64,000 nt of DNA from Guillardia theta CCMP2712 (GCF_000315625.1 NW_005434639.1:319511-383510), one strand, 5' to 3'; counted from the first letter of the stretch, positions 23,434 to 41,254 are shown. Notes: a model not told the origin generated them from the letters alone. A program made the numbers and translations.

Positions 23434-26400
23434 CTAGCAGTTGTGGGGCCCGTCCAGCCCCCATGGCCCCAGAGATCGCTGAGGCTCTGCGAATACAAGC
23501 GAGTAGCTCATGACTCGCAGCTCCTGATCATGCTGTAGCGCTTGTCAACGAAAGAACCACACAGAGATAACAAGTCACCTCGACCGGCAGAGCCGCTGGC
23601 TCAGGCTGGTGGCTTCCTTCCATAGCTTCTGCTGTTGCCTCCTTGCTTGTGGACACCAGGGGAGGGAGCTGCTCCTGCTGCTCCTGCTGCTCCTGAAAGG
23701 TTAGGTCAAGAAATAAGCCTCGCTCGCTCTCATGGGAATACCGGAGAAGTCTCGCCAGCTGGCTTTTCCTGACGCTCCTTATGATCTTTCTCTTCCCCTT
23801 CGCCTTTCTTATCATCATCTCCTTCGCCTTCGCCTTTCTTATCATCATCTCCTTCGCCTTCGCCTTTCTTATCATCATCTCCTTCGCCTTCGCCTTTCTT
23901 ATCATAATCTCCTTCGCCTTCGCCTTTCTTATCATAATCTCCTTCGCCTTCGCCTTTCTTATCATAATCTCCTTCTCCTTCGCCTTCCTCCTTATTATCT
24001 TCCTCTTCCCCTTTGTCTTCCTCCTTGTCCTCATCCCCTTTGTCTTTGTCTTCGTCGTTGACTTTGTCTTGATACTCCAAGGAGGATTTGAGCTTCTGCG
24101 GTCGCTTCTCCTCGCTGTCGGTCTTGGAGCTCTCAAGGACCAACCGATTCTGTTTCTCAACCATCTGTGCCACATGTCCTGGTGGAATCGCGTCCAGATG
24201 GGGTCTGTCGGTGTCTCCTCGATCTCTGCCGATCTCTTCATCATCTTCTGAGGATGACGATCGGGAGGAGGCGTCGGCCATCGGTGACTCCAAGTATGGT
24301 TCCAGGCCCTCATCGTTGACCTGATTCTCCTGGGTGTTTGCGGGCTCGGGGGCTGGAGTGACAGCCGGAGACGCTCCTTCCTTGAGCTTCTCGGCGATCC
24401 TTCTCCTGTAGTAAGCGAACAAACCTGCAGCCACCAGCGCCACCACCCCGCACGAGACCGTCACGCCAACGATGACAGGCACCTTGGAGCTCTTGGTGTC
24501 TTTTGTCGTGCCAGGTGGAGTAGAGGATGCAGCAGGAGGAGGAGGAGCTGCTTCCTTGGGGCTCGGCGACTGATTCTCGGGAGGCTTTCGTAGCACGGCG
24601 TACACGGAGAAGTGAAGTATTTGAGCAGTGAGGAGGTTCTGCTGAACATCGACCCTGCTCTCCACGTATTCCCATTGTTTGGTGAGGGAGTTCAAGTAGT
24701 ACAAGGCCACAGGCTGCGCGACCAAGTCCGTGACGTGTGATGTTGAGAGTGAGAGCGTGAGAGGCTTCAAGAACGTGGCGCCTGTTGGCTCCAGCACCAG
24801 AGTCGGCCCGACTGACGACCCAGAGGCTAGCGGGACTCCAGCATACAACTTGACGGTCATGTCTAGGGTCGAGCCGTAAAAGTCCTTGGGGAAGGTCAGA
24901 TTTCCCCAGCTGGCTAGGGAGACTTGGCCGCCGAGAGATCCAACGACTACGGCTGGCTGCACCAGGAGAGGGGTTAAGGTCTCTGCTGTGCAGCTGTCGC
25001 CGACGACCTCACCCAGGCAGAGAGTCTCGCAGTGAGGGCCGAGCATCTGAGGTTTGCAGGCTGTGGTTGTCGAGGAGGAGTTGACACATCGGGTCCGGAG
25101 TATGCTGTTGCCGGGCTGACATGTGAATCCGCTCTCAAGTGTGCAGGACTGACTGCATCCGTCCTGACTGACTCGGTTGCCATCGTCACATTCTTCTTTA
25201 CCAGTCACTCGCCCATCACCTACAAGTCAAAGATGTCAGGGCGAGCAATTATGACTTGCGCAAAGTATCTGCAACTTACCACACACGCTGACAGAAGATA
25301 CCGAGACAGCAACTAACCCTGTCTCTTTGCATGAGCACTGGGCAATGTTGGGAGAGAAGCCAACAGGCGAACAGGTTTCGCTGCTCCAGCCTTGTTTCCA
25401 CATCACACAGTTCCATAGGATGCTTGAGAGGTCTGATTGAGAAACAGGGATTCTCGCGTCGTAGTCGAACTGACTGACGGAATTCCGGACGCCGTTGAGG
25501 TCACTGATGCCTAGGATGAAACCATGCGAGTCTGAGATGAACGTGTCTGTGTTGGTCGCTAGCGGAGTCCTCCAGACATACATGAACGTGTAAAATGATG
25601 CGCTTTGCTCGCTACTGGCTGGAACAACAGCAGAGCTGCCAGCTGAAATGTTTGCTAGCATGAATAGTGACTCGACAGCAATGTCTTGAGGGTGCAAAAT
25701 CTTTGTGAATGCGGATTTCCACTTGTAAGTAAAGATGTGGTCGGTGGTAGGGACACAAGTATGATCACAAACAAGGTTGTTCTTGATGTCAATAAAGTCG
25801 AAGATCCCGTGATACATCGCAGTCGCAGCAGAAGTAACCAGCATGCTCATACATCTCGTCTTTTCTGACATCGACAACACAGATTGCTGCAGCTGATCTT
25901 TAAGTGTGGATGCAATGAAGATGATTGTCTGTACCGTTGTTCTCTCTAGCGAATATTGCAAGACTTGCGGGATCAAGATGGTTGTGTTGCTTAGAATCTC
26001 AACGGCAGCGACAGTTGCATCCATCGTAAGCGGTTCTGAACTGTTGACAAGGAAGAAGAGGGTCCCGATGTTTTCCAGCAAGTTCCCAGCTGATGGCACT
26101 TGTTTTTCAATGATTCGCAACAGTGAGAGGGTAGTGTTGCTTCTGATCAACGCGCTTTCTGACAGCTGCACATCATTGACGCGCAGAGAAGCTGCAGCTC
26201 GACGGCGACGAGCGAGAAGCGTCGAGCTGTCTCTCGAGAGCTTCTGCGTGAGGGATATGGCATAGTTGCTGAATTCAGATGTCTTCCCCAAGAGAACGAA
26301 GGAGTCCAGCGCCTGCTGCGCTACGACGGGAGAGACGGAGGGGATGGGAAGCACAACGACGAGATCAAGGAAGTAAGTCGACTGAGCGCCGAGGCTGTCG

Positions 26401-29400
26401 ATGGCGATGACGGAGATGTTGATCTCGCCTGAGGGCAGGTAGAGGCTGCGCATGGGGGACGAGGATGGAGCCAAGGAGGCTTCGGTTCCGTTCTTAACCT
26501 TGTAGTTGAACTGAAATGAGAGCGGCAGATCAGCGTCGCTGAAACTTCCGCATTGTACCACAAACTGTGTGTTCAACTCGTACCCTTGCGTCGGCTGGAC
26601 GCTACACTGACCCCCCGAAGGAGCAAGATTCACTCGGAACTCAAAGGAAGCTGATCCCTGGCACAGGCCGTTACACACCTGACCTTCTTGTGGCGACTGG
26701 TAGCTTGTCAGAAGGACTGTGTATCGACGGCCCTGAACGAAGGTGGAGGAGGACAAGAAAAGCTCGTTGGTCGTTGCTGGCAAGACCGTCGCAGTCCCTT
26801 GGTCGATGAGCTGCCACTTGTAGGAGCTGCAGGAGGTGCAGGAGTACTCGAGGAGGTTCAGGGTCTGCAGAGGGTTCAGAACGTTCTCTCCCTTGACGAG
26901 CATGGTGGAAGGGGATGTGAGCGTTGTGAGCGGTACGAACTCTTCGACGAAGACCATGGAGACGCTGGTGCTGGCTGACCTGGAGTCTTTCATGACCTCA
27001 AGTGAGAAAATATACTGCACGTTGACTTCAAACCCGTCGGAAGACATGGACAGCACAGACGAGCTGTCGAAGACCAACGGATTGTTGCTTTTCCGGTCCC
27101 TGCACATCATCCCCTGCACCTTACACGTCCAGGTGAATTTCAAGTTGACGTCAGGCGAGCTTCCTCTATAGTCGGGATCTTTTGAATCTCCCGCATCCAA
27201 GGAAAGCTTTTGCGAGCGGCCGATCTTGGAGTCTCCGTTCTTGACAATGGCAATGAGATCGGAAGCCAAGAGAGTGAAGGAAGTGCTGACGGCAGTCTGT
27301 GTCGGAGGAGTCGTAGGCAGCGTCACCGTCAACTTCAACTTATACAACCCGGGGACCGCGAGCGTTCCTTTGGACAGAAAGAAAGTCGGAGAGTTTCTTG
27401 CCAGCACAGAAGCGGGAATGCCATTGTTAGTCGCAGCGTTATCCTGGTTGACTTGCTCCCACTTGAACTGCAACTCCATCTCCTCGCTGCACTTGGAAAA
27501 GGCTGTCTGGGCCCCAAGCAGGATGTCATCCGATTTCTTGTACAAGTCGAACCCTGACAAGCTGACGACAGGGATGGGCAAGGATGTGCGATAAAACTGC
27601 AGGCTCAGTGTTTCGCTCTTCGTTCCAAGAAAGTTCACCCCGTACACTTGAATGCGGTAGGAGCTCTGGGATTGAGCGAGGTCGGAGCTTGAAATCACAA
27701 TCTTGTCGCTCACAGTGACTGCAAGTTTGGATTGAATCACATCAGGGCATCCCATGCAGGTCCAGGAGAAGGTCAGAGGCCTTGACGACGTTCCTAGAGC
27801 CATGATCTGAGCATCGTCGCAAGGGCCAACCTCCTGGGGCCCCAAGAGTTGAAAGACAGGTTTGATGAGAATGCTGGGACTTGCGACCTTGACGGTTCCA
27901 CTCACGTAGGGGCCGAGGCCTGACACGTGCTTGACGAGGTTCATCTTGATCTGAAGGTTGTCATTGACAGCTACTGTCGCGTCATAGGACAGAATGATGC
28001 TCAGCGTCTGTTCGTCTTGCCACGTGCACTTGGCTGACTTGCCAAAAGGTTGAGAGGTGCCAATTTCGAGGAAGGATTGACATGTTGACAATTGAGCCAC
28101 AGGGAGAGAAAAGATATTGGTACTTTCAGAGAAGACAATCATAATTGAAGATCCCATCGCATCGAAAGAAGCTGACAGCACGGAAGGAGCTGCAATGTAC
28201 TCAAACTTTCCACTTCCTTGTAAGGTGCTCATCCCCGCCATGGTCTTCGCGTTGGTAACGCTCAGGTCTATCACTGTGGACTTGGAAAAGAAGCTATTGG
28301 CTGGAACAGCTACTATCACAAACGTTTTCTGCATGGTGGAGTTGACTAACTTGCCCATAACTGCATATTCTGTACCAAAACTGATTGCCAGACCTGAGAA
28401 ACTTTGAATTTGCCCGATATTCGTGACAGCGATCAACAAGAAGTCAGTTCCATCGACTCCTCCCTGACAACCTCCTGTCACTTTGATCGGGTCGTCGAGA
28501 CTTTGCATCTGAAGACGGTTGCAAGTCAGCTGTACGGTAGCGTCATAGGACTCAAAGAACAAAGCTGCCGTTGAGTTGTACCCGTCAGACACCGTCAAAG
28601 TAGCCTGCTGCAGACCGACAGGAAGGGCAGGCATCAGAAACTCGACGATCGATTCTCCAGAGAAAGAGTCTGATTGTACAACACGATTGACAGTAGCTTG
28701 CTGCTTGCTACTGAAAACGACCGAGACATCAGTCTCGGTCAATTTCGTTGGGAAGTGCGAGAATATCATGGTCACGATGGCACCCCCTTTCAGAGAACCT
28801 CTCGACGGGATCATGCTCAACACTTTCGAATCCGGACGAGAATAAGAGAACTGACTGGTCACTGTCATGTCAGCTTTCTCTTGCGCGTTCGCAATCTTTG
28901 TTGGAATGATGGACAGCTGAATGCTTCCTACGGATTTGTGACTTGGAGATACACAAATGAAGTCATTGTATCCCAAAACTTGCATAACTCTTGCTTGTTG
29001 AGAATCAAACACAACTGAAACATCTAAGGCTGTCGAGATTGCAGGAAAATTCTTCATTGAAATCTGGACAGAGTCTCCGCCCATCACTGACGACTGTGTT
29101 GGATTTACCGAGATGATTGATGGCATGAGAAAATACGAGATTGCCAGGTTCTGAGGAGACAATTTTCCGTTTTCCAATTGCAGAAGCACATCTGACCCAT
29201 CAGAAGATACGGGGGCTTCAATTGCAACCTGCTGAGTACAAAATGTTTGGTCAGTGCAGGTAGACGTCCTAGTAGCCTTCAACTCTGACTTCACTACACC
29301 GGAGAGTCTTGAGGGAAGAAAAGCATAGACTTTCAAGTCGTCGTTGGTCCCGTAGAAGGAGATGAAGATGTTGGTTCCTCCCTGAGAAGAAGCTCGTCGA

Positions 29401-32400
29401 GAGGCTAATGGTGCTGGTGCCATAAACTGAAATTGAGATGTCAAACCTCCACACTGATTCTGATTGCTGGTAATACAGAATTTGATGGTTCCAACAGAGG
29501 AAACATTCGGCGTCAAGAAGGTGAGGAACCTGCTGCTTGTGTTCTGAGTTCCTTGTTGACCAACATCTGTGACGGTTACGATCTGCCCCTCGAAGCTAGC
29601 GAAGAGCTGACTGTTGGCGATAGAGAACGAATTGTATACCACGACATTCACGCGAGTGCGGGTAAGAACTTGACCGGAGCTGGGGAATACGTAGCCAATG
29701 TAGGGATTTGCTGAGACCTGAAAGTTCAACGGTATGCTGAAAGTCTCCTGGTTGGCAACGCGTCTGACTTGAATTCTCAGCTGATACTCGGAGCTTGTCA
29801 GCCTTGCGACGAAAGAAACTTTGAGAGTCGCAGACCCTAAGGTAGCGCCAAGGAGAAGCTTGAACTCCGCTGGGTGAGTCTGGTTGGTTGATGAAACGGC
29901 TTCGACGTTGCTTAAATCAAAGTAGGATGACCAATCGCTCAGTTGAGCTTGGATTTGAATGCTGTCGCCCTCCACAAACTTGCTTGGGAAGTAACTCAAC
30001 ACTTGAGGGTTCGGTGGACTCTGCACATAGATTTGAAAAGAGTTACTCTTCTCATACCCAGCGGCCCAAATTCTTCCTGTAAAAATACCAGAAGACGCTG
30101 GTGTCACGAAACTGATGTTCATCTTGGTCAAGGCATTCGTGCTCGACAAGACCGTTACGGTTGCGTTTGGATCTACGCTGAAGTCGATGTAGACTTGAAT
30201 GCCTCCTTGCGTTTCAATCTTAGGGAAGTTTTCAAGGTCAAGCAGGATGCTGGATCGCTGCAAAGTTAGAACTGGACTTGACGTGCAACTGTCTGGCCTC
30301 GAGGACGTACATCCAGGGTAAATCGACACGATGTTGGGAGGCCCTTCGATGTCTGCGATGAACTCAAACGGTATCGATAGGCTTCTTGTAGTCAACAGAT
30401 CCACAACCTGAAACGTGGAGACACACGTGTAGTTCCTTCCACAACAGCATGGCGACACGTACTGGGGTAAGGTGAAGTTCATGGAGGTAAGCCTTATCGT
30501 AGAGACCACAGTGATGGCCAACGGAACCCCATTGTACAAGAGCTTCAATCCCCCCGAATAAGCAGAAATGAGAGTGTCTGAAGCGATCGATATCAGCACT
30601 GGACTTCCCCCTTTCGTGCTGCCTGTAGATGGGGATGACGAAATCAAGCGCATCGCAGTGAAGGTTGAGGAGTCCAAGCAGTATTTCATATCACAAGACG
30701 TGGTCATGGGGGGGTCGAACTTGAGAAGGTAGTCATTGGCTAGGTAACTTGACTTTGCTGCTGGGCAGAAGACTCGATAGTTGCAGGGAGGCTGCATCTG
30801 CAGCAGAAAACTCATCTTGACTTGCTTATAGAGCAGATGCACGTCTATGGTAGCGACACTTGTGAACTGAGCCTGAGGAGGAATCTGCCCGATGAGCGAC
30901 ACTTCAGACTGAGAGATGGACACTGCTGAGGTGGGATGGAAGCTTGTGTTTCCCAAGTTGAAGAGCCAGGCGCTGGTGTCGGGATTGGACTCGAAGACGT
31001 TGGAGACTGTGATACGTACCAAGTCACCGCCAGCAGTCGAAGCCATGGTAGGGAAGACAAGAGAAACGCGAGGAACACTGCTGGAGAAGTACTCGAAGGG
31101 AAAGATCACACGAACGTCAGGCGCTGCGATCAATCCCACAGATATGTTGACAATACTCGTAGTGTTCCAGGGGGGGATGTTGAACGACAATGTGACCTTG
31201 GGAGCAGTCGACGCAGTTGCTGCAACAAAGAAAAGGTCTACAACTGGGAGAGGCTTGATGTCGTTGATTCGAATTAAGTATTTACTGCTAGCAGATTCTT
31301 GGAAATTGCTGATAGCGACCGTGCAGAGGGTTGCGAGTGACACGTCACCGCTTGAAACCGAAAGATACTCCAACTTCGGTGTGAGGTCAGGCAGAAACAC
31401 ATTCGCAAGAACTGGCAATGCTTGACCTGCTTCGTTTTGTGCCACTATAGAGACAGAGTACGTGACACCAATCGCAAGCTGCATCGTCACATTGCAAATC
31501 TTCGAGCACTCACTGCTCTTGACCAGTACAGTGGCTGTGAGAATGCAACTGGATCTGCACTCTGTGAATGAGACTAGAAAACTTCTTGCAGAGTTATAGG
31601 TCTCCCCTAATTCTTGTCTGGTCAATGAAAAATCCGAATGGTTCCAAGTTATCAAAACGAATCCATTCCTCGGTTGTTGATACTGAATGTTGAAGACTGG
31701 TGAAGGAATTCCGATAAGAACCATTGTAAATACTTTTGACGAAGATGAAATGCCCCCATTGAGCACACCTCCATCATCTCGCAAACTCACCTTCCAATCA
31801 GATCTTCCGAACGTCCCAGTTGTTCTGGAGAAGGTTAAGAGACCCTGCTGGTCAATCCTAGGAAACTCGCTAAACAAATCAGACCGACCAGACAGAAGGT
31901 CCATTTCAAACGTCATGTTCTGTTTGCTCTCATCGGGTGGCCCTGCAGAAATATCCCAAGCTATTGAAGATGATATGATTCCAACACGTTGATAGACTGT
32001 AAGAGATCCGATCATGGAAAAGCTCGGGGGGTCGTTGACCGGTACGATGATGATCTGCAGTGTGCGTGTCGCTGACCATGCCTGCCCGTTGTTGTCTTCT
32101 CCCCCGTTGTCATGCAGCTGTATCGTCCAGTTGGACGTGCCTGACATGTTTGGATTCGCCTTGAGCATGAGCGTCCCGCTCTGGTTTAGCGAGGGTGCGA
32201 CCTGGAAGATGCCAACGTCTGCCCCCCCCGTCCACGTCATGCTGAAGGTCAGCGACTGCCAGCTCTCGTCGCTTGGCCCTGACGAGATGCTGTTGGCCAA
32301 GCCGGTGTAGACGTACAAGCCAGCGTCCTCCAGGAGGGTGATGACAGGCTGCTTGAGCAAGAAGCTTGGAGCATCGTTGACGGGGACAACCTTGATGACA

Positions 32401-35400
32401 AACGAGTGCTGTTGCGAGACGTTGACGCCTCCGAACCGCGTGCCACCGTCATCTACCAACAACACCGTGCAGTGAAATTCCCGTTGACATTCAAGGCTGT
32501 TTGGAAGGTGAGGCTGCCGTTGGTCGGGTCGATGGAAGGCAGGCGGGTGAAGGCAGCCGGCGAGCTTGAGGATACGATGAAAGTCAGCTTCTGCTGCACC
32601 TCGTCGAGAGACCCAGCAGAGATGTCATACGCAGCCCCGCCTATCGTGACCAGGCCGGCGTCCTCGAGGCGTACGAAGGTCGAGACGATTGAGAAGGTAG
32701 GGGCCACATTCTTATCCTCTAGCACGATGCTCCGGTTTTGCTCAGGGCTCTTCCCTGCGATGTTGACCGCCGTGATTGTAACGGCTAGGGTGGACTTGGG
32801 AAGGACGTCATCAAGAACGATGCTGCAGACACCCAGACAGACCGTCAGGTTCTCCATCCTCTCGAAGCCGTAGTAGCTGCCGCTGGACGCTCTCGCATAT
32901 CGCCCGGAGACGTTGAAATGATACTGGGCCGCTTCAAAGTCCTGGCCGGGATCTTTGTATGACCACTGAATGGACACGCGATTGAGAGAGATCTGAGTAA
33001 GGACGACGTCAAAGACGCTTCGAGGTCTGCTCACGACTGCGAGCTTCAAGGCCTGCTTGGTCGACACGTTGACTCCGCCGTTCATCGTCCCGCCATCGTC
33101 ACGCGCAACAACAGAGAAAGTAGTCAAGCCTGTTCCCAACGACGTGGCATTGAAGGATAGAGTGCCGCTCGGAGATATCGCGAGGGTGTTAAGGAGGAGG
33201 TTCTGAGGCCCGCCTAGGAAGGTGACGCTGAAGGAGATGTTCTGACTGAGATCCTCGTCAGGAGCTCCCAAGGAGATGTTGCGAAGAGCGTTGGGGACGA
33301 GGTTCGATCCGAGGTCGAGGAGGAGGAGGAGTTGGCTAGCGACGACGAAGCTCGGGGGGTCGTTGACCGGTACGATGATGATCTGCAGTGTGCGTGTCGC
33401 TGACCATGCCTGCCCGTTGTTGTCTTCTCCCCCGTTGTCATGCAGCTGTATCGTCCAGTTGGACGTGCCTGACATGTTTGGATTCGCCTTGAGCATGAGC
33501 GTCCCGCTCTGGTTTAGCGAGGGTGCGACCTGGAAGATGCCAACGTCTGCCCCCCCCGTCCACGTCATGCTGAAGGTCAGCGACTGCCAGCTCTCGTCGC
33601 TTGGCCCTGACGAGATGCTGTTGGCCAAGCCGGTGTAGACGTACAAGCCAGCGTCCTCCAGGAGGGTGATGACAGGCTGCTTGAGCAAGAAGCTTGGAGC
33701 ATCGTTGACGGGGACAACCTTGATGACAAACGAGTGCTGTTGCGAGACGTTGACGCCTCCGAACCGCGTGCCACCGTCATCTACCAACAACACCGTGCAG
33801 TTGAAATTCCCGTTGACATTCAAGGCTGTTTGGAAGGTGAGGCTGCCGTTGGTCGGGTCGATGGAAGGCAGGCGGGTGAAGGCAGCCGGCGAGCTTGAGG
33901 ATACGATGAAAGTCAGCTTCTGCTGCACCTCGTCGAGAGACCCAGCAGAGATGTCATACGCAGCCCCGCCTATCGTGACCAGGCCGGCGTCCTCGAGGCG
34001 TACGAAGGTCGAGTTGATTGAGAAGGTAGGGGCCACATTCTTATCCTCTAGCACGATGCTCCGGTTTTGCTCAGGGCTCTTCCCTGCGATGTTGACCGCC
34101 GTGATTGTAACGGCTAGGGTGGACTTGGGAAGGACGTCATCAAGAACGATGCTGCAGACACCCAGACAGACCGTCAGGTTCTCCATCCTCTCGAAGCCGT
34201 AGTAGCTGCCGCTGGACGCTCTCGCATATCGCCCGGAGACGTTGAAATGATACTGGGCCGCTTCAAAGTCCTGGCCGGGATCTTTGTATGACCACTGAAT
34301 GGACACGCGATTGAGAGAGATCTGAGTAAGGACGACGTCAAAGACGCTTCGAGGTCTGCTCACGACTGCGAGCTTCAAGGCCTGCTTGGTCGACACGTTG
34401 ACTCCGCCGTTCATCGTCCCGCCATCGTCACGCGCAACAACAGAGAAAGTAGTCAAGCCTGTTCCTAACGACGTGGCATGGAAGGATAGAGTGCCGCTCG
34501 GAGATATCGCGAGGGTGTTAAGGAGGAGGTTCTGAGGCCCGCCTAGGAAGGTGACGCTGAAGGAGATGTTCTGACTGAGATCCTCGTCAGGAGCTCCCAA
34601 GGAGATGTTGCGAAGAGCGTTGGGGACGAGGTTCGATCCGAGGTCGAGGAGGAGGAGGAGTTGGCTAGCGACGACGAAGCTCGGGGGGTCGTTGACCGGT
34701 ACGATGATGATCTGCAGTGTGCGTGTCGCTGACCATGCCTGCCCGTTGTTGTCTTCTCCCCCGTTGTCATGCAGCTGTATCGTCCAGTTGGACGTGCCTG
34801 ACATGTTTGGATTCGCCTTGAGCATGAGCGTCCCGCTCTGGTTTAGCGAGGGTGCGACCTGGAAGATGCCAACGTCTGCCCCCCCCGTCCACGTCATGCT
34901 GAAGGTCAGCGACTGCCAGCTCTCGTCGCTTGGCCCTGACGAGATGCTGTTGGCCAAGCCGGTGTAGACGTACAAGCCAGCGTCCTCCAGGAGGGTGATG
35001 ACAGGCTGCTTGAGCAAGAAGCTTGGAGCATCGTTGACGGGGACAACCTTGATGACAAACGAGTGCTGTTGCGAGACGTTGACGCCTCCGAACCGCGTGC
35101 CACCGTCATCTACCAACAACACCGTGCAGTTGAAATTCCCGTTGACATTCAAGGCTGTTTGGAAGGTGAGGCTGCCGTTGGTCGGGTCGATGGAAGGCAG
35201 GCGGGTGAAGGCAGCCGGCGAGCTTGAGGATACGATGAAAGTCAGCTTCTGCTGCACCTCGTCGAGAGACCCAGCAGAGATGTCATACGCAGCCCCGCCT
35301 ATCGTGACCAGGCCGGCGTCCTCGAGGCGTACGAAGGTCGAGTTGATTGAGAAGGTAGGGGCCACATTCTTATCCTCTAGCACGATGCTCCGGTTTTGCT

Positions 35401-38400
35401 CAGGGCTCTTCCCTGCGATGTTGACCGCCGTGATTGTAACGGCTAGGGTGGACTTGGGAAGGACGTCATCAAGAACGATGCTGCAGACACCCAGACAGAC
35501 CGTCAGGTTCTCCATCCTCTCGAAGCCGTAGTAGCTGCCGCTGGACGCTCTCGCATATCGCCCGGAGACGTTGAAATGATACTGGGCCGCTTCAAAGTCC
35601 TGGCCGGGATCTTTGTATGACCACTGAATGGACACGCGATTGAGAGAGATCTGAGTAAGGACGACGTCAAAGACGCTTCGAGGTCTGCTCACGACTGCGA
35701 GCTTCAAGGCCTGCTTGGTCGACACGTTGACTCCGCCGTTCATCGTCCCGCCATCGTCACGCGCAACAACAGAGAAAGTAGTCAAGCCTGTTCCTAACGA
35801 CGTGGCATTGAAGGATAGAGTGCCGCTCGGAGATATCGCGAGGGTGTTAAGGAGGAGGTTCTGAGGCCCGCCTAGGAAGGTGACGCTGAAGGAGATGTTC
35901 TGACTGAGATCCTCGTCAGGAGCTCCCAAGGAGATGTTGCGAAGAGCGTTGGGGACGAGGTTCGATCCGAGGTCGAGGAGGAGGAGGAGTTGGCTAGCGA
36001 CGACGAAGCTCGGGGGGTCATTGACGGGACGCACCACAATGTGCAATGGAATGGGAGAGTAGTGGGTTCGGTCTCCATCCACGAGACTGATGTTCCAGAA
36101 AGCGTCTCCCGAAGCATTGCCTTCTAATTGCAGGTGAAGGCTTCCGTTTAAATCCAATGACGGCGTTACCTTGAACAAATTGTTGCTAGATTCAATCATC
36201 GCACACTGAAAGAAGCCTTGTGAACTGACATAACTGATGTTGGTTGCAACAGAAGTAACGAAGTCAAGCTTTTTGCTATCTTCATCGGTAGTCAGGAAGG
36301 GAAGCTTCAGTACGAAGAATGTGACTGACTTCTCGGATGAAGGAATGTAGACACTCGTCGTCGAGATGTTAGTTGCCATGGGCTCCTGTGACGGCATCGC
36401 ATAAGTCGGTTCGGGTGTGGTTGAGATTACATCCGCAGCATTCGGCATGCCGGTTGCCTTTGGGGGCCATGCTGGATGAGGCAAGTCACCGAGAGTGATG
36501 AGCAACTTGCCGGCAGACGACACGTCACACTGAGGCACTTGGTTCTTGTACAAGCCATTCCAATCCTGTACCGAGTCAATGAGGTTGTTGATCCGCCAGC
36601 TGACCAAGATGTATTGAAGCAAAGCTGTCAAGGCTTCATAGTTCTTGGAGCTCTCTAGTGCCCAGGGAAGGGAGAAGCGAGTCGACCTCAAGTCTCCGTA
36701 CAAGGTGATCCATAAGGGGCCATGGAAGCCGAGGTCGACCTCGAGGCAGGACATGCGAGTCTCGTCTCCCCGCATGTCTCCATCCGACTCCACCAGTGCA
36801 GTTACAACCACAGCAGTTTTCCCTGAGACTGCCACTGACATGGCCACATCCAGCCCGGCAGTCGCAAGAGCAAATCGTTTCAAGAAGCTTGCTGGAGTGT
36901 TGTCAGGCATGTCTCGCAGGACAGCAGATGCTTTGACGTGTAGGAGGGAAGGAAATGAAGGGACGAGAAATCCGAGAGGAGCGCCTCTTCTTTCCAAGAC
37001 GTCTACAGCCCCTGCATACTTCCCTCCGTTGCCCAAGCTCAAAGTGACGATGTGATCCAAGTCGACCTTGACTGGCGTGTGGGGTATAATCAGAATCGTT
37101 GTGATGGATCCATTTAACAATCTCTGTTCAGAGTTCCAGTCGTAGTCACCTCTCCCGATCAGAAGGAAGTTTTCCTCACCATCCTTTCTCAATCTGGCGG
37201 TAACTCCATATGGTCCAGCGTTGAGACTGTACGATCCCTCTGCAGCAATTGCATACAGCTGGCGGTTGCTGATAGTCAGAAGATTTGTTACGGTCATGTT
37301 GGCATTTAACCCCTTGCCCCTCACATCATATTCAGCGATCAAGCTAAGGTCAATCAGTTCGTTTCCTAGAAGAGCGGCTCTTGAAATCAACTTCACCATT
37401 CCCCCTGGTTTGAGCATGACTAGCTCGCGGAGATCTCCACAAACATCCAGGGCAAACCAATGTCTCTCACCAATCCAAAGGCTGGCAAGAACACTTCCAT
37501 GCGCATAGTCCCATCCTCGGCTCAACAAGCCTTGGATCACAAGATCAATAGAGGTCAACTTACTCTCAGCCCAGCTACTAGAAAGATGGATTTCAGACGG
37601 AAGGCAAGACCAACCAAGACAATCACCCGAAGCATTTGCAAACCCAACAAGATTATTAGATCCAATCAGAGCATTCAGTGAACTACTCCCTGCCAAACGA
37701 GCATCCGACACCACTCCATTGAGAGACATTTCTATGTCAACCTGCCTCTTCTGGTTCCACAACGCTACCAGGCCTGGAGCCAGGTGCAGCTTCCTTTCTG
37801 TCTTGGGCTCGTCGCAGGACGGCCAGCAGCTTCCGGAGCTGCACGACAAAGAACATGCCCTGATTTGATGATAGTATGTGGAGAAGGTCAGGCCTCCGCT
37901 CGACTCTAGGCTGCCGCCTCCTGCTAGCGGCCCGAGCCCAAGGCTTGTCGAGTAGTTGGCTGCGAGCAGCTCCTCTCTCTGCGTCACGTCATCGAATGTC
38001 GTCCCGGCCTCCGTCGACGAGCTCGAGGGCCACGGCGTGTACTGGTCGGTCTTGGTGTACTTGCCTGCTATCGACCCCGTCCAGTCGACCAGAGGCTCTG
38101 AGTCATAGCCCACATGGAGCACGCTTGACCCGTCCAGAGCTTCATTCAGCGTCGCCCCGTCAAGCGTCATGGTCATGTCGATCTTCTTTTTCTGGTTCCA
38201 CAACGCTACCAGGCCTGGAGCCAGGTGCAGCTTCCTTTCTGTCTTGGGCTCGTCGCAGGACGACCAGCAGCTTCCGTAGCTGCACGACGAAGAACATGCC
38301 CTGATTTGATGATAGTATGTGGAGAAGGTCAGGCCTCCGCTCGACTCTAGGCTGCCGCCTCCTGCTAGCGGCCCGAGCCCAAGGCTTGTCGAGTAGTTGG

Positions 38401-40888
38401 CTGCGAGCAGCTCCTCTCTCTGCGTCACGTCATCGAATGTCGTCCCGGCCTCCGTCGACGAGCTCGAGGGTATCGGCGTGTACTGGTCGGTCTTGGTGTA
38501 CTTGCCTGCTATCGACCCCGTCCAGTGCAAGAGTTTGTTATTTTGGAAAAGTAAAGTGACATCTCCATTCATAGATAGCAAGTTTGCTTTCAAATTGTTG
38601 ATCAGATTTGCATCAAAGTAGATTAATTTGTGATTGTTATCCTCTACATTGAGCACTGCTCCGAAATTCCCATCTAATAGGGACATTTGTGGCCAAGATG
38701 CTCCCGCATGGATGTTCCAGTTCAGCAAGCGATGAGAATTCAATTCAAAGTTTATCTTTCCTTGCAAATCAACACTTCCTTGCCCGGGCAATATGAAACT
38801 GAGGCTCGTATCAGTTTTTAGCAGAGATCGGTTCTCCCATCGAATGTCTGCAAGAAGGAAGATTCCTTCGAATCCGTTGTTTCCAGGCTTGTTGTCTCCT
38901 AGGAAGAGGGTCACTCGGAACTTTTCTTTTCGATCTTTTCTATCTTTGGCAATAAGATTGATACTTATTTCATCATTTCGGAGTACTAACCCTCCATCAA
39001 TGCTGCCGTCCAGTATCGTTGAGTCCCCGATGCTGAAGCTGACGCTAGCCAGCCCTTCGATCTTCCCCATCTCTCTGACCTCTCGTGCTAGCAAGGCAGC
39101 ATCTGCCATGTACCAATCCTGGGAGCTGGTTTGCATCTTGGAAGACAATGTCCAATTCAAAGGCAACAAGAAGAGTTGATCCACCTTGTTAAGTTGCCGC
39201 CTAGCTGCAGTATTGACCCACTCCCAATTCATGGTGCCCTGCGAGTCAACAAGTCTGACAATCGCAAACAAGATGCTTGATCCCTCTAGACTCCCCGTGC
39301 CGGTTTTACTTGCAATCCCGATGTCCACTTCCAACGAATGCTTGACGAGTACAGTGCTGCCTACCTCAACGTCCAGGGCACAAATCAGCGAGAGACTGTC
39401 GTCTAGGACATCGAGGTACGGTTGACTTTGCCCTGCATTGAATCCAATTAGTTCGTATGCCCTGACCAGGTCAATCTTTGTGAATTCGGCGACATTAGCA
39501 TGACCATATATAACCGGATCACCTTGCCCTGATAAGAAGTAACTGATGTCCGCAAAAGTTATTTCCAAGGATGGTAGTTTATGAGGATCAAAGAGAAATG
39601 AAAAATTTGGTATCTTTTGTTCTGAAATCAGATTGTTTTCCAATGAGCCACAAACCTGAAGTCTCCATCGCTGAACAAAATCAGCTTCAAAACAATTCAA
39701 ATTCTGATTCCCAACCCATCCGGATCGAGGATGCATCTTTCTATGAAAATTTGTCTGCACTGGATACAGCTTGATGAAAAATGAATTTCGGCTTCCCAAC
39801 AGATTCCGGAACAACGCTGAGCTCGAACCTGATGTCAAAAAGGTAACTGAAATCCCAGAAACAGGATGAGTGGTCAGATAGTTCGTAAAGACTTGTACAA
39901 TTGGCCGGATGCTGCTGCTGTTGCATTTTCCATGAGCGCAAGTAATGAAAAAATTTGCTCGTGTTCGAGAAATCTGATCGAGATGAGTAGAGCCATTTCC
40001 CTTTTGCGAGATCAGCAGCCACTGGGTGGGTAAAGTCCCAATCCTTACAACTCCATTCGGTTGCTTTGAGCTCGATTCCTGGAACTGTGACTCGGTCCCA
40101 TAAAACGCTTCGGCCCCTATATCAAAAGAGATTTCAGGGACGTGAACGTATACAGCAGAAATCAATCCACTCGAATCAAAGATTAAGGGGAGTCTGGGTT
40201 TCAAGATCAGAGCAATCTCCTCTTTAGGAACGACGAACATGCTTGCAAAATCCTTGAGATCTTCTGCTTGAAAGAGATTCAGAGCAAGGTTCAAGACAGA
40301 GGCCAAGGATTGTGAATCGGTAGATCGACGTGAAATCTTCCCCATCTCATAACTCAGGAATTTCGTGAGGTTTCTCGTCTGCGTCTTCTGATACAGACCC
40401 CAATAGAGGTCGGCCTTCACCTCAAGGAAACATTCCACCTTGAGTCTGAGAAGCGCCCCATGCCAGGACATGAACTGCGAGAAGTCGACGTCGGTGACGT
40501 TGACACCTCCTCGGAGCGACTGAGAGTCAGAGCTCTGACCCATGACTTGAACAGGCCCGTCGATGTTGATTTGCACAAGGTGCAGCCAATAGTAAGTTGC
40601 CGAGAGGAAAGAAACATTGCAAATCGCTGATTCAAATTGAATGTCATGCAGCATAGAAGCCTGCGAGGGGGCGGTTGCGGTTGCATTGAACACGATCGCA
40701 TCTCTTTCAGAGGCGACATGCAGAACAATTCCTTGAGGATGAAGCATCATGTCTTTCTTGGGTAGGGTGAAAACGACGAAAATCGCAATGCCAGCCAAAA
40801 GAAGCAGAATCAGAGCAGCAGCTGCGAGGTACCGGTATCGACGATTCGAGACTTTCTTCATTGCCTCTTCCTCCTCAGGAGACTCCAT
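23434..40888 (-). CDS. Giant (~5,700 aa) polycystin-like adhesion/receptor protein: N-anchor, beta-rich region, cadherin-like + FN3 repeats, IPT/TIG, REJ, GPS-like, DUF4215-like/EGF, ZU5, TM, acidic tail; 1-bp frameshift near 32473
   Basis: ORFs 32453-40921, 25236-32465 and 23730-25208 join via a 1-bp deletion (relative to the repeat copies) and intron 25220-25279 (SVCG|DGRVTGKEECDDGN). Motifs: VNDAPSF/DDGG; AVNIAGKS; LDAGDSKDPD..FTWTC; VNLAPSGGQCSVQPTQG; CVMW..WSSETC..QCSC; LEPTGATFLKPLTL..HFS; TM VIVGVTVSCGVVALVAAGLFAYY. The 3' end is approximate. Confidence 0.85.
23795..23990 (-). repeat. 30-bp coding tandem repeat (~6 copies) encoding GEGEGD[Y/D]DKK
   Basis: Unit cttcgccttcgcctttcttatcat(c/a)atctc seen directly. 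Confidence 0.9.
32020..36020 (-). repeat. Three near-identical 1329-bp (443-aa) tandem coding repeats
   Basis: Matching shadow ORFs at 33214/34543/35872 (period 1329). Only a handful of differences are visible between copies. Confidence 0.97.
37750..38527 (-). repeat. 441-bp-period coding duplication (2 copies) with Cys cluster
   Basis: Shadow ORFs at 37876 and 38317 share sequence. Protein WTGSIAGKYTKTDQY...RACSxSCSxGSCWxSCDEP...LWNQK occurs twice. Confidence 0.95.
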
Positions 40889-41254
40889 CTTGGAATTATA
40901 CCAGCACGCAGGGTCGAGCAAGATACAGCCTTCAAGGAGGAAATCACGCGGGTGGATTGAGGGAGTTTGACGCAGAGGAGAGAGCGAAATGCATGAGGAG
41001 AGATCTACCAGAGGAAGGGAAGGAGGGAGAGGTGAAGGAAGTGCATGCTGGGGTGGGGGAAAGAAGGAAGTAAAAGAAAGTCGTCAAGCAGGGGGATAGG
41101 TGAGGCTGTTGACGTCACGCTCGTGGAACAAGAGGGTACGATGATACCCTTCTTGTAATAGAGACTCACCTATAAAAACTATCAGGAGCTCATGGATCCA
41201 ATGCCGTGGCCTTCGAGTGAACCGTCAAGTTTGACGGATGGGGGTAGGGTAGAC

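What the first reader, a model, noticed from the sequence alone, without database searches (positions are those of the whole stretch)
23434..40888. Giant chimeric polycystin-like adhesion receptor (~5,700 aa)
Seen in order: N-terminal TM, ~1,400 aa beta-rich region, ~11 cadherin-like and 4 FN3 modules, multiple IPT/TIG repeats, REJ region, helical segment + GPS-like Cys motif, CGDG..EECDDGN..DGCS repeat, EGF-like, ZU5 with HFS, TM, acidic tail. Known: REJ+GAIN/GPS defines polycystin-1/REJ receptors, which normally continue into PLAT and multi-pass TM domains. Inference: here that channel-associated part is replaced by a ZU5 module and a single TM, and a bacterial-style adhesin stalk is added. 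I do not recognise this architecture as described; it is the best candidate for a novel adhesion, prey-capture or mechanosensing system in the window.
Basis: partly seen in the sequence, partly recalled or inferred. Interest (0 to 1): 0.82.

Follow-up and report, generated by a model that had tools for sequence, protein, structure and literature searches.

The report
Giant cryptophyte REJ-GAIN-ZU5 surface protein
This is one very large surface-protein gene of the alga Guillardia theta. It joins a sea-urchin/polycystin-type REJ module to two related self-cleaving domains placed just outside the membrane. This combination has not been described, but the gene is already catalogued, belongs to a small family, is almost silent in cultures, and carries an unresolved one-base frameshift.

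Summary
Window 23730-40888 (minus strand) is one gene of about 5,700 aa, already catalogued as GUITHDRAFT_108698 / XP_005832411.1 of Guillardia theta CCMP2712 (5,723 aa).

- **Gene structure.** ORF2 and ORF3 are joined by a real 60-nt GT-AG intron. A Hanusia phi transcript-derived ortholog reads straight across that junction. ORF1 and ORF2 are separated by a 1-nt deletion in one copy of a 3 x 1329-nt near-identical tandem repeat, not by an intron. The public model hides this with a fake intron. I could not tell whether the deletion is real.
- **Domain calls.** REJ is solid (Pfam E 5e-53). GAIN and ZU5 are supported by homology to proteins that pass the Pfam GPS and ZU5 cut-offs, and by an AlphaFold model matching solved GAIN and ZU5 structures (Z about 11). 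The GPS cleavage motif is dead (His to Glu, Thr to Gly). The ZU5 HFS motif is intact and sits on the last beta-turn, about 40 residues before the C-terminal TM.
- **How unusual it is.** The architecture is not unique. At least three G. theta paralogs, Hanusia orthologs and metagenomic relatives share the GAIN / Cys-rich / ZU5 / TM cassette. Single-pass REJ proteins such as suREJ1 are already known.
- **Expression.** Near zero in the available G. theta transcriptomes.
- **Earlier notes.** The scan noted the dead GPS / live ZU5 pair before, on this same window (s1-437456).

Verdict: a new variant of a known kind, of moderate interest.

The parts
40886..40888 (-). Likely start codon (MESPEEEE...). 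The public model starts 9 codons later, at MKKVS.
40754..40837 (-). N-terminal hydrophobic segment (aa 18-45), preceded by KK..RRYRY. Probably an uncleaved N-in signal anchor. The C9 paralog of the N-terminal module has the same TM-then-module layout.
   Evidence: hydropathy 3.05; paralog
36359..40753 (-). N-terminal ectodomain module of about 1,450 aa, fold unknown. It is shared only with G. theta genes on C161, C15 and C9 (28-38% identity), not with the C39/C75 paralogs. It contains an internal 441-nt duplication (37734-38474).
31415..36358 (-). Cadherin-like (Big_9 / Cadherin_4-like, VNDxPSF linkers) and FN3 stalk.
   Evidence: Pfam fn3 1e-7, Big_9 4e-7; UniRef name
32012..35997 (-). Tandem triplication of a 1329-nt (443-aa) unit made of cadherin-like, FN3 and two cadherin-like modules. 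Copies are 99.7-99.9% identical. Read depth in an independent DNA run is about 2.8x that of the flanks.
32472..32473 (-). 1-nt deletion relative to the other two repeat copies (AAC to AC in the gene's sense). It shifts the frame and ends ORF1 at 32453. Real mutation versus assembly error is unresolved.
27516..31414 (-). About 1,300 aa of Ig-like / IPT-TIG-type repeats. Three TIG stretches are detected; the rest is unassigned.
26331..27500 (-). REJ domain.
   Evidence: Pfam PF02010, E 4.9e-53, profile positions 5-420 of 452
25281..26360 (-). GAIN domain: helical subdomain A plus beta-sandwich subdomain B.
   Evidence: profile hits to proteins carrying Pfam GPS; model and Foldseek, BAI3 GAIN E 1e-9; VIA, CD97 Z 11.3
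25296..25415 (-). GPS-like motif (W-x-C..W..GW..C..C-x-C) ending CSCKET|GLVAV. The catalytic His is replaced by Glu and the nucleophile Thr by Gly, so it is predicted not to cleave.
25220..25279 (-). 60-nt spliceosomal intron (gtaagt...tag), phase 1, inside the CGDG motif. Its position is conserved in paralogs C39 and C75. The Hanusia ortholog reads VCGDGRVT across the junction.
25119..25219 (-). Cys-rich repeat (DUF4215 type: GDGR..EECDDGN..DGCS..C).
   Evidence: Pfam DUF4215 E 5e-4, below the cut-off; pappalysin-2 match
24975..25091 (-). EGF-like Cys-rich segment (weak call).
   Evidence: only weak EGF hits in paralogs; low pLDDT
24585..24962 (-). ZU5 domain, extracellular and next to the membrane.
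   Evidence: paralog domains pass Pfam ZU5 (4 of 6, best 8e-9); ankyrin ZU5 Z 11.4, rmsd 2.2 A over 116 aa
24606..24614 (-). HFS motif at the turn between the last two ZU5 strands. This is the predicted autoproteolytic site (HF|S).
   Evidence: PIDD HF/S (PMC3210808)
24414..24482 (-). C-terminal transmembrane helix followed by YYRRR (positive-inside).
23730..24413 (-). Acidic low-complexity cytoplasmic tail with a 30-nt x 6.5 repeat (23792-23986) and a stop codon at 23730. The public model instead splices on to further small exons reaching about 23434. The true 3' end is unverified.

Best explanation
This is a member of a cryptophyte family of giant membrane-anchored surface glycoproteins, GUITHDRAFT_108698 of Guillardia theta.

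Shown:
- It is one gene with one intron, built from two blocks. The first block is an N-terminal signal anchor plus a lineage-specific ~1,450-aa module, shared with genes on C161, C15 and C9. The second block is shared with the paralogs on C39 and C75 and with Hanusia phi orthologs.
- The second block runs: cadherin-like/FN3 stalk, IPT/TIG array, REJ, GAIN, Cys-rich repeat, EGF-like segment, ZU5, Pro/Ser linker, one TM, acidic tail.
- The GAIN domain has the fold but lacks the HL|T catalytic residues.
- The ZU5 domain keeps HFS on its last beta-turn.

Inferred:
- Both termini are cytosolic, and the ~5,400-aa loop is extracellular and heavily N-glycosylated (82 sequons).
- It acts as an adhesion or recognition protein.
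- ZU5 cleaves itself at HF|S in the secretory pathway. The last strand, linker, TM and tail would stay bound to the ectodomain non-covalently. This is how GAIN works in adhesion GPCRs and polycystin-1, and how the HFS-bearing MAIN domains work in bacteria. Pulling on the ectodomain could then separate the two fragments.
- In this subfamily the membrane-proximal ZU5 has taken over the cleavage role from GAIN. Relatives P0009/P0010 and the C121 paralog keep both sites.

Open: whether this particular copy is functional, because of the frameshift and the near-absence of transcripts.
For: - One gene: the intron is conserved and the Hanusia ortholog P0001 reads across it. The public 5,723-aa model is 99.4% identical.
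- REJ: E 4.9e-53.
- GAIN: the post-REJ profile finds only 10 proteins among 1.84 billion. The five distant ones carry Pfam GPS exactly at the aligned end, followed by DUF4215 and, in two of them, ZU5. The model matches BAI3, BAI2, CELSR1 and CD97 GAIN.
- ZU5: transitive Pfam support. Ankyrin ZU5 gives Z 11.4 and rmsd 2.2 A. HFS is on the last turn and is conserved in 10 of 11 aligned relatives.
- Dead GPS: CSCKETGL here against CxCxHL|T in paralogs and relatives.
- Topology: two TM segments with positive-inside flanks. The same N-anchor-then-module layout occurs in the C9 paralog.
- Mechanistic precedents: HF/S autocleavage after ZU5 in PIDD (PMC3210808). HFS cleavage and surface release by bacterial MAIN domains (bioRxiv 10.64898/2026.05.12.724683). 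A common autoproteolytic fold of GAIN, ZU5 and Nup98 (Liao et al. 2014, as cited in PMC11697300).
Against: - No experiment shows cleavage, surface location or adhesion.
- Pfam does not hit ZU5 or GPS in this protein directly.
- The model is of middling quality (pLDDT 69.5, 15-row alignment).
- If the N-terminal segment is an uncleaved anchor, ZU5 cleavage would not release the ectodomain from the cell.
- The tail has no recognisable signalling domain.
- The assembly carries a frameshift after aa ~2,805.
- Only 3 RNA reads fell on 5.9 kb among 19.8 M records read. None of the ~13 RNA-like runs of the species holds its words.
- One close paralog (C75) has QLS instead of HFS.
Confidence: 0.6

Rival explanations
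1. This copy is a very young pseudogene or a truncated allele. The 1-nt deletion is real, translation stops at 32453, and only a 2,811-aa N-anchored fragment, or nothing, is made. The family may be functional but this locus is not.
For: - The assembly distinguishes repeat copy 1 by the deletion plus three substitutions.
- The public model needed a fake intron that removes 32 aa.
- Almost no RNA is seen.
- AAC to AC is not a long-homopolymer context of the kind that typically causes consensus errors (my judgement).
Against: - About 8.7 kb downstream stays open in frame with no other lesion.
- That stretch is 73% identical to the expressed Hanusia ortholog.
- Short-read contigs collapse the three copies and show the base present, so they cannot confirm the deletion.
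- Near-identical tandem repeats are error-prone in assembly.
Confidence: 0.35
2. It is a gamete or mating-type recognition receptor of the REJ kind, as in sea-urchin suREJ1, PKDREJ, the Ectocarpus male-gamete REJ gene and the Cryptosporidium GGC proteins. It would be expressed only in a sexual or alternate life stage.
For: - REJ proteins are linked to fertilisation in several lineages (PMC4700764; bioRxiv 10.64898/2026.10.13.757955; PMC10855541).
- Silence in vegetative cultures would fit.
- The family is large and diversified, with at least 35 REJ loci, and the ectodomain repeats expanded recently.
Against: - No sexual-stage data for G. theta were examined.
- The Hanusia ortholog is present in a culture transcriptome.
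- REJ also occurs in non-reproductive polycystins.
Confidence: 0.2
3. It is the sensory half of a 'split polycystin'. The single-pass REJ-GAIN protein would pair in trans with one of the many PKD2-like channels of this genome and gate it.
For: - The genome has at least 80 PKD_channel matches, while no REJ locus examined has a PLAT match beside it.
- Another first-stage note reports a REJ/GPS single-pass gene next to a PKD2 channel (s1-435504; unchecked).
Against: - There is no channel gene in this window beside the gene. The nearest PKD_channel match on the contig is about 25 kb beyond the window end.
- The tail has no coiled coil or other known polycystin pairing element detected.
- No binding test was made.
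Confidence: 0.12

Closest known systems
Polycystin-1 / PKDREJ / suREJ3 (PKD1 family)
   Same: A REJ domain followed directly by a GAIN domain with a GPS-type Cys/Trp pattern. A large modular ectodomain containing Ig-like repeats.
   Different: No PLAT, no 11-TM or channel-like part, and the GPS lacks HL|T. ZU5, one TM and an acidic tail follow instead. An N-terminal anchor and an unknown 1,450-aa module are added.
Sea-urchin suREJ1 (single-pass receptor for egg jelly)
   Same: A REJ-containing ectodomain ending in one transmembrane segment (PMC10855541).
   Different: suREJ1 is about 1,450 aa, with EGF and C-type lectin modules (from my memory of Moy et al. 1996, not checked here). It has no ZU5, no cadherin-like/TIG stalk and no N-terminal anchor.
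Adhesion GPCRs (GAIN-7TM)
   Same: Adhesion modules, then a GAIN fold immediately before the membrane region. Some members also have an uncleaved GAIN.
   Different: There is no 7TM. GAIN is separated from the membrane by Cys-rich, EGF-like and ZU5 domains.
ZU5 domains of PIDD1, UNC5CL, UNC5, ankyrin and ZO-1
   Same: The same fold (Z about 11). HFS sits at the last turn, as in the HF/S autocleavage sites of PIDD.
   Different: The known ZU5 proteins are cytoplasmic and are usually followed by UPA and a death domain. Here ZU5 is extracellular, juxtamembrane, and followed by a Pro/Ser linker and a TM.
Bacterial/archaeal MAIN domains (Brogan and Rudner 2026 preprint)
   Same: An extracellular, envelope-anchored, GAIN-like beta-sandwich that cleaves at an HFS motif and holds adhesion domains non-covalently.
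   Different: No sequence or structure comparison with MAIN domains was made here. This protein is eukaryotic and also has a separate bona fide GAIN and a REJ domain.

Membership tests
PKD1/REJ family (polycystin-1-like) | REJ domain | tested here: met
   Pfam PF02010, E 4.9e-53, 180.8 bits;
PKD1/REJ family (polycystin-1-like) | GAIN fold after REJ | tested here: met
PKD1/REJ family (polycystin-1-like) | GPS cleavage triad HL|T/S | tested here: not met
   The motif here is CSCKET|GL. Paralogs and relatives have CxCxHL|T.
PKD1/REJ family (polycystin-1-like) | PLAT domain after the first TM | tested here: not met
   No PLAT in any ORF of the gene. The genome's PLAT matches lie elsewhere.
PKD1/REJ family (polycystin-1-like) | 11-TM / channel-like C-terminal part | tested here: not met
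   Only one C-terminal TM. No PKD_channel match in the gene.
ZU5 domain family (PF00791) | Match to the Pfam ZU5 profile | tested here: inconclusive
   No direct hit at E <= 5. Homologous domains in paralogs and relatives do pass (4 of 6 in A1, best 8.2e-9; P0009 at 3e-5). The link to this protein is E 1e-9.
ZU5 domain family (PF00791) | ZU5 beta-sandwich fold | tested here: met
   Ankyrin ZU5 3kbt/3f59: Z 11.4, rmsd 2.2-2.5 A over 116-120 aa. ZO-1 ZU5: Z 9.2. Foldseek TM 0.64.
ZU5 domain family (PF00791) | HF|S autoproteolytic motif on the last turn (PIDD/UNC5CL subtype) | tested here: met
   HFS occupies model residues 563-565, between the last two strands, and is conserved in relatives. Cleavage itself was not tested.
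ZU5 domain family (PF00791) | Cytoplasmic location with UPA and death domain downstream | tested here: not met
   The domain lies before the C-terminal TM, after Cys-rich extracellular modules. Only a linker, TM and acidic tail follow.
Adhesion GPCR | 7TM (7tm_2) after GAIN | tested here: not met
Cadherin superfamily | Cadherin repeat profile and Ca-binding linker motifs | tested here: inconclusive
   Only Big_9 (4e-7), just above its cut-off, and Cadherin_4 (0.012), below its cut-off. VNDxPSF occurs 7 times. UniRef names it 'Cadherin domain-containing protein'.
MAIN (microbial GAIN-like) domains | Sequence or fold similarity to YfkN-type MAIN domains | not tested
The resemblance rests on the HFS motif and on position only.

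The most novel reading that the evidence does not exclude
The extracellular, juxtamembrane ZU5 with HFS would be a eukaryotic counterpart of the bacterial MAIN tether. It would be a self-cleaving, force-separable joint that took over from GAIN in a cryptophyte REJ receptor family. The tandem GAIN-ZU5 cassette has both sites live in some relatives, and GPS dead but ZU5 live here. It would then be a natural record of how these related autoproteolytic folds are exchanged at the membrane.
Probability: 0.3. Interest if true: 0.7.

Novelty: new variant of a known kind. Interest (0 to 1): 0.48.

Why it matters
GAIN, ZU5 and Nup98 are thought to share one ancient self-cleaving fold, and bacteria were recently reported to use HFS-type GAIN-like domains as releasable surface tethers. 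ZU5 has so far been treated as a cytoplasmic domain.

Here a eukaryotic protein family places a ZU5 with an intact HFS motif outside the cell, directly before the membrane anchor. It sits behind a GAIN that has either kept or lost its own cleavage site. If the ZU5 cleaves, this gives a simple system for asking how autoproteolytic tethers are swapped in evolution, and what REJ-GAIN modules do without a polycystin channel.

It also shows that G. theta carries a large (at least 35 loci), diversified and unstudied REJ family. For annotation, the public model of this gene contains an artificial intron that hides a frameshift.

Tried and rejected
- **Direct Pfam scans** of the post-REJ and ORF3 segments at E <= 5 gave no GPS or ZU5.
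- **phmmer against PDB sequences** gave only a pappalysin Cys-repeat match.
- **hhalign** of the subfamily's post-REJ profile against canonical-GPS paralogs aligned the GPS motif only weakly (E 6.6e-4, probability 27%). On its own this was not convincing.
- **ESM Atlas by features** was uninformative for both the ZU5 part and the N-terminal part. Atlas by shape gave only weak rows: ZU5-bearing clusters, an adhesion GPCR and PIDD1.
- **N-terminal module.** The word-based homolog search found nothing. The AlphaFold model from a 5-row alignment failed (pLDDT 36). The fold remains unknown, and this is not evidence of novelty.
- **Third homolog search** on the Cys-rich to ZU5 part of the Hanusia ortholog returned only DUF4215-driven hits.
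- **Read laying to settle the frameshift** did not work. The DNA runs are kept as contigs that collapse the three repeat copies, so the majority form (base present) is all that shows. It neither confirms nor refutes the deletion.
- **Rejected readings.** An assembly-artefact origin of the triplication is rejected, because depth is about 2.8x in an independent run. The ORF1/ORF2 junction is not an intron: there are no splice signals, and the frame is restored by one base.
- **Complex prediction** was not attempted, because no binding claim is made.

Full report
**What is there.** The region holds three long minus-strand ORFs: 32453-40921 (2,822 aa), 25236-32465 (2,409 aa) and 23730-25208 (492 aa).

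ORF2 and ORF3 are separated by a 60-nt sequence, gtaagt...tag (25220-25279). Removing it restores C-G|DGRVTGKEECDDGN. The same intron position is seen in two paralogs. A transcript-derived protein of the related cryptophyte Hanusia phi (P0001, 73% identical) reads VCGDGRVT straight across the junction and continues through the ZU5-like domain, TM and tail.

ORF1 and ORF2 are not separated by an intron. ORF1 ends in ...NGNFTARCCW*, where the upstream repeat copies read ...NGNFNCTVLLVDDGG, and one missing base explains the difference. The site lies in the last copy of a 1329-nt tandem triplication (32012-33339, 33340-34668, 34669-35997). Copy 1 differs from the other two by this deletion, one AC>TT change and one C>T change. 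Copies 2 and 3 differ by a single base.

**Identity.** The profile search returned a 5,723-aa protein that is 99.4% identical to my conceptual product. It is EKX45431.1 / XP_005832411.1, hypothetical protein GUITHDRAFT_108698 of Guillardia theta CCMP2712. UniRef100_L1JA84 names it 'Cadherin domain-containing protein'. That model bridges the frameshift with an artificial intron that deletes 32 residues, and it adds small 3' exons. The genome handle (87.1 Mb, 669 contigs) is consistent with G. theta.

**Frameshift.** Three DNA-like runs were laid on 27400-33340. Depth was 69 on unique sequence and 196 on the repeat, so three copies are real. These runs are stored as contigs that collapse the copies. 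They show the majority form, with the base present and the majority letters at the three copy-1-specific sites. This fits both a real deletion in one copy and an assembly error. The 8.7 kb downstream is fully open and conserved with Hanusia. If the deletion is real, it is therefore very recent.

**Expression.** An RNA run kept as raw reads gave 3 reads on 5.9 kb among 19.8 M records read. About 13 RNA-like runs of the species hold none of the gene's words. The gene is close to silent in the cultures sampled. The Hanusia orthologs do occur in a transcriptome-derived set.

**Domains.**
- Pfam gives REJ at E 4.9e-53, plus fn3, Big_9, TIG and DUF4215. Segment scans add Cadherin_4 and further TIG stretches.
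- VND[PA]PSF linkers occur seven times. There are 82 N-glycosylation sequons and two strong hydrophobic segments, aa 18-45 and aa 5446-5472, each with positive residues on the predicted cytosolic side.
- GPS and ZU5 are not hit directly, so I tested them in other ways, described next.

**ZU5.**
- The ORF3 domain matches paralogous domains elsewhere in the genome (E 1e-9 to 1e-5). Four of six aligned members pass Pfam ZU5, the best at 8.2e-9.
- HFS is conserved in five of those six members.
- In the AlphaFold model of P0006:4801-5400 (pLDDT 69.5), residues 447-572 superpose on ankyrin ZU5 with Z 11.4 and rmsd 2.2-2.5 A over 116-120 residues. ZO-1 ZU5 gives Z 9.2, and Foldseek TM by target is 0.64.
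- HFS sits exactly at the turn between the last two strands. This is the geometry of the HF/S self-cleavage sites of PIDD (PMC3210808).

**GAIN.**
- A profile of the 360-aa post-REJ segment (five cryptophyte sequences) was searched against 1.84 billion representatives. It found only ten proteins.
- The five distant ones are metagenomic and labelled 'cysteine-rich repeat protein'. They carry Pfam GPS exactly where the profile ends, followed by DUF4215. In P0009 and P0012 a ZU5 and a TM then follow.
- On one such contig the preceding, overlapping ORF carries REJ. The whole REJ-GAIN-ZU5 order therefore exists in an unidentified organism too.
- The model shows a helical bundle (11-184) followed by a beta-sandwich (196-355). 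It matches BAI3, BAI2, CELSR1, latrophilin, GPR110 and CD97 GAIN structures (Foldseek E down to 1e-9; CD97 subdomain B Z 11.3, rmsd 3.4 A over 132 residues).
- The GPS Cys/Trp pattern is kept, but the cleavage triad reads E-T|G instead of H-L|T. Relatives P0009/P0010 and G. theta paralogs on C37, C1, C58, C8, C23, C50 and C121 keep HL|T.
- The C121 paralog has REJ, a canonical GPS, a Cys-rich region, a ZU5 with HFT, a mucin-like linker and a TM in one open frame.

**Family context.**
- The genome has at least 35 REJ loci in very long open frames. About ten carry a Pfam GPS.
- The eight PLAT matches all lie away from the REJ loci. There are at least 80 PKD_channel matches.
- Only C39 and C75 share the whole post-REJ-to-TM cassette closely.
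- The N-terminal 1,350 aa is not shared with those two. It is shared with genes on C161, C15 and C9 (28-38% identity).
- The C9 copy also has a TM directly before the module. The C15 gene ends in three hydrophobic segments and has no Pfam domain.
- The gene is therefore a mosaic of two blocks that occur separately elsewhere, which supports the word 'chimeric'.
- The N-terminal block has no detectable relatives outside the genome and could not be modelled.

**Mechanism (inferred).** The topology prediction puts both termini in the cytosol and about 5,400 aa outside the cell. By analogy, the ZU5 would cleave at HF|S and keep the two fragments joined through its beta-sandwich. The membrane-proximal strand, linker, TM and tail would form the C-terminal fragment. 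The analogies are:
- PIDD ZU5;
- GAIN in adhesion GPCRs and polycystin-1 (PMC4810088 abstract);
- bacterial MAIN domains, which cleave at HFS and release surface proteins.

GAIN here would be a structural, uncleaved module. If the N-terminal anchor is retained, cleavage would create a two-anchor heterodimer rather than a shed ectodomain. None of this has been tested.

**Comparison with known systems.** The gene shares REJ and GAIN with the PKD1 family but fails the PLAT, multi-pass and HL|T tests. It resembles suREJ1 in being a single-pass REJ protein (PMC10855541). It has a ZU5 fold in an unprecedented extracellular position, as far as my searches go. I found no paper on REJ proteins of cryptophytes or on a GAIN-ZU5 tandem. 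The library does not hold most subscription journals.

**Earlier notes.** A first-stage note on this same window (s1-437456) already reads the pair as a dead GPS followed by a live ZU5, and my tests agree. Two other notes (s1-435504, s1-433776) describe other REJ-GPS genes of this genome with different ends. I did not check them.

**Verdict.** The gene is a catalogued but uncharacterised member of a small cryptophyte family, with an undescribed REJ-GAIN-ZU5-TM design. Its functional state at this locus is uncertain.

Noticed in passing
window 32472-32473, and P0006 around residue 2797: The public gene model XP_005832411.1 bridges the 1-nt frameshift with an artificial intron that deletes 32 residues (LLVDDGG...VNDAPS). 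This is an annotation artefact worth correcting once the base is verified.
   Followed up: yes
window 37734-38474: There is a 441-nt (147-aa) internal duplication inside the unknown N-terminal module, with copies about 96% identical. It is a second recent expansion in the same gene.
   Followed up: partly
L046:3174-3176 (G000:C161, about 42.9 kb): The C161 paralog of the N-terminal module carries an in-frame TAG inside an otherwise conserved stretch. It could be a pseudogene, a small intron or an error.
   Followed up: no
L036 (G000:C121:205800-210800): This paralog has REJ, a canonical GPS (CACNHL|T), a long Cys-rich region, a ZU5 with HFT, a long Ser/Pro/Thr mucin-like linker and a TM in one open frame. 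Both putative cleavage sites are intact.
   Followed up: partly
L048:2659-13270 (JGI metagenome 3300071517 contig, 29 kb): An unidentified organism encodes a REJ/fn2/DUF4215 ORF that overlaps a GAIN-DUF4215-ZU5-TM ORF. It is probably one eukaryotic gene split by a prokaryotic gene caller. The same contig recurs in three samples.
   Followed up: partly
G000 genome-wide: There are at least 80 PKD_channel (PF08016) matches and at least 35 REJ loci, but only 8 PLAT matches, none next to a REJ locus. One locus on C40 has REJ, GPS and a PKD_channel match within about 7 kb and may be a canonical polycystin-1-like gene.
   Followed up: no
L051:2201-8524 (G000:C15): This 2,107-aa ORF shares the unknown N-terminal module, has no Pfam domain, and ends in three hydrophobic segments. 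It suggests the module also serves multi-pass membrane proteins.
   Followed up: partly
P0023 (Vitrella brassicaformis CCMP3155 protein, 2,254 aa): Its precomputed Pfam list has GPS, DUF4215 and PAN/Apple domains. So a GPS followed by this Cys-rich repeat also occurs in a chromerid.
   Followed up: no
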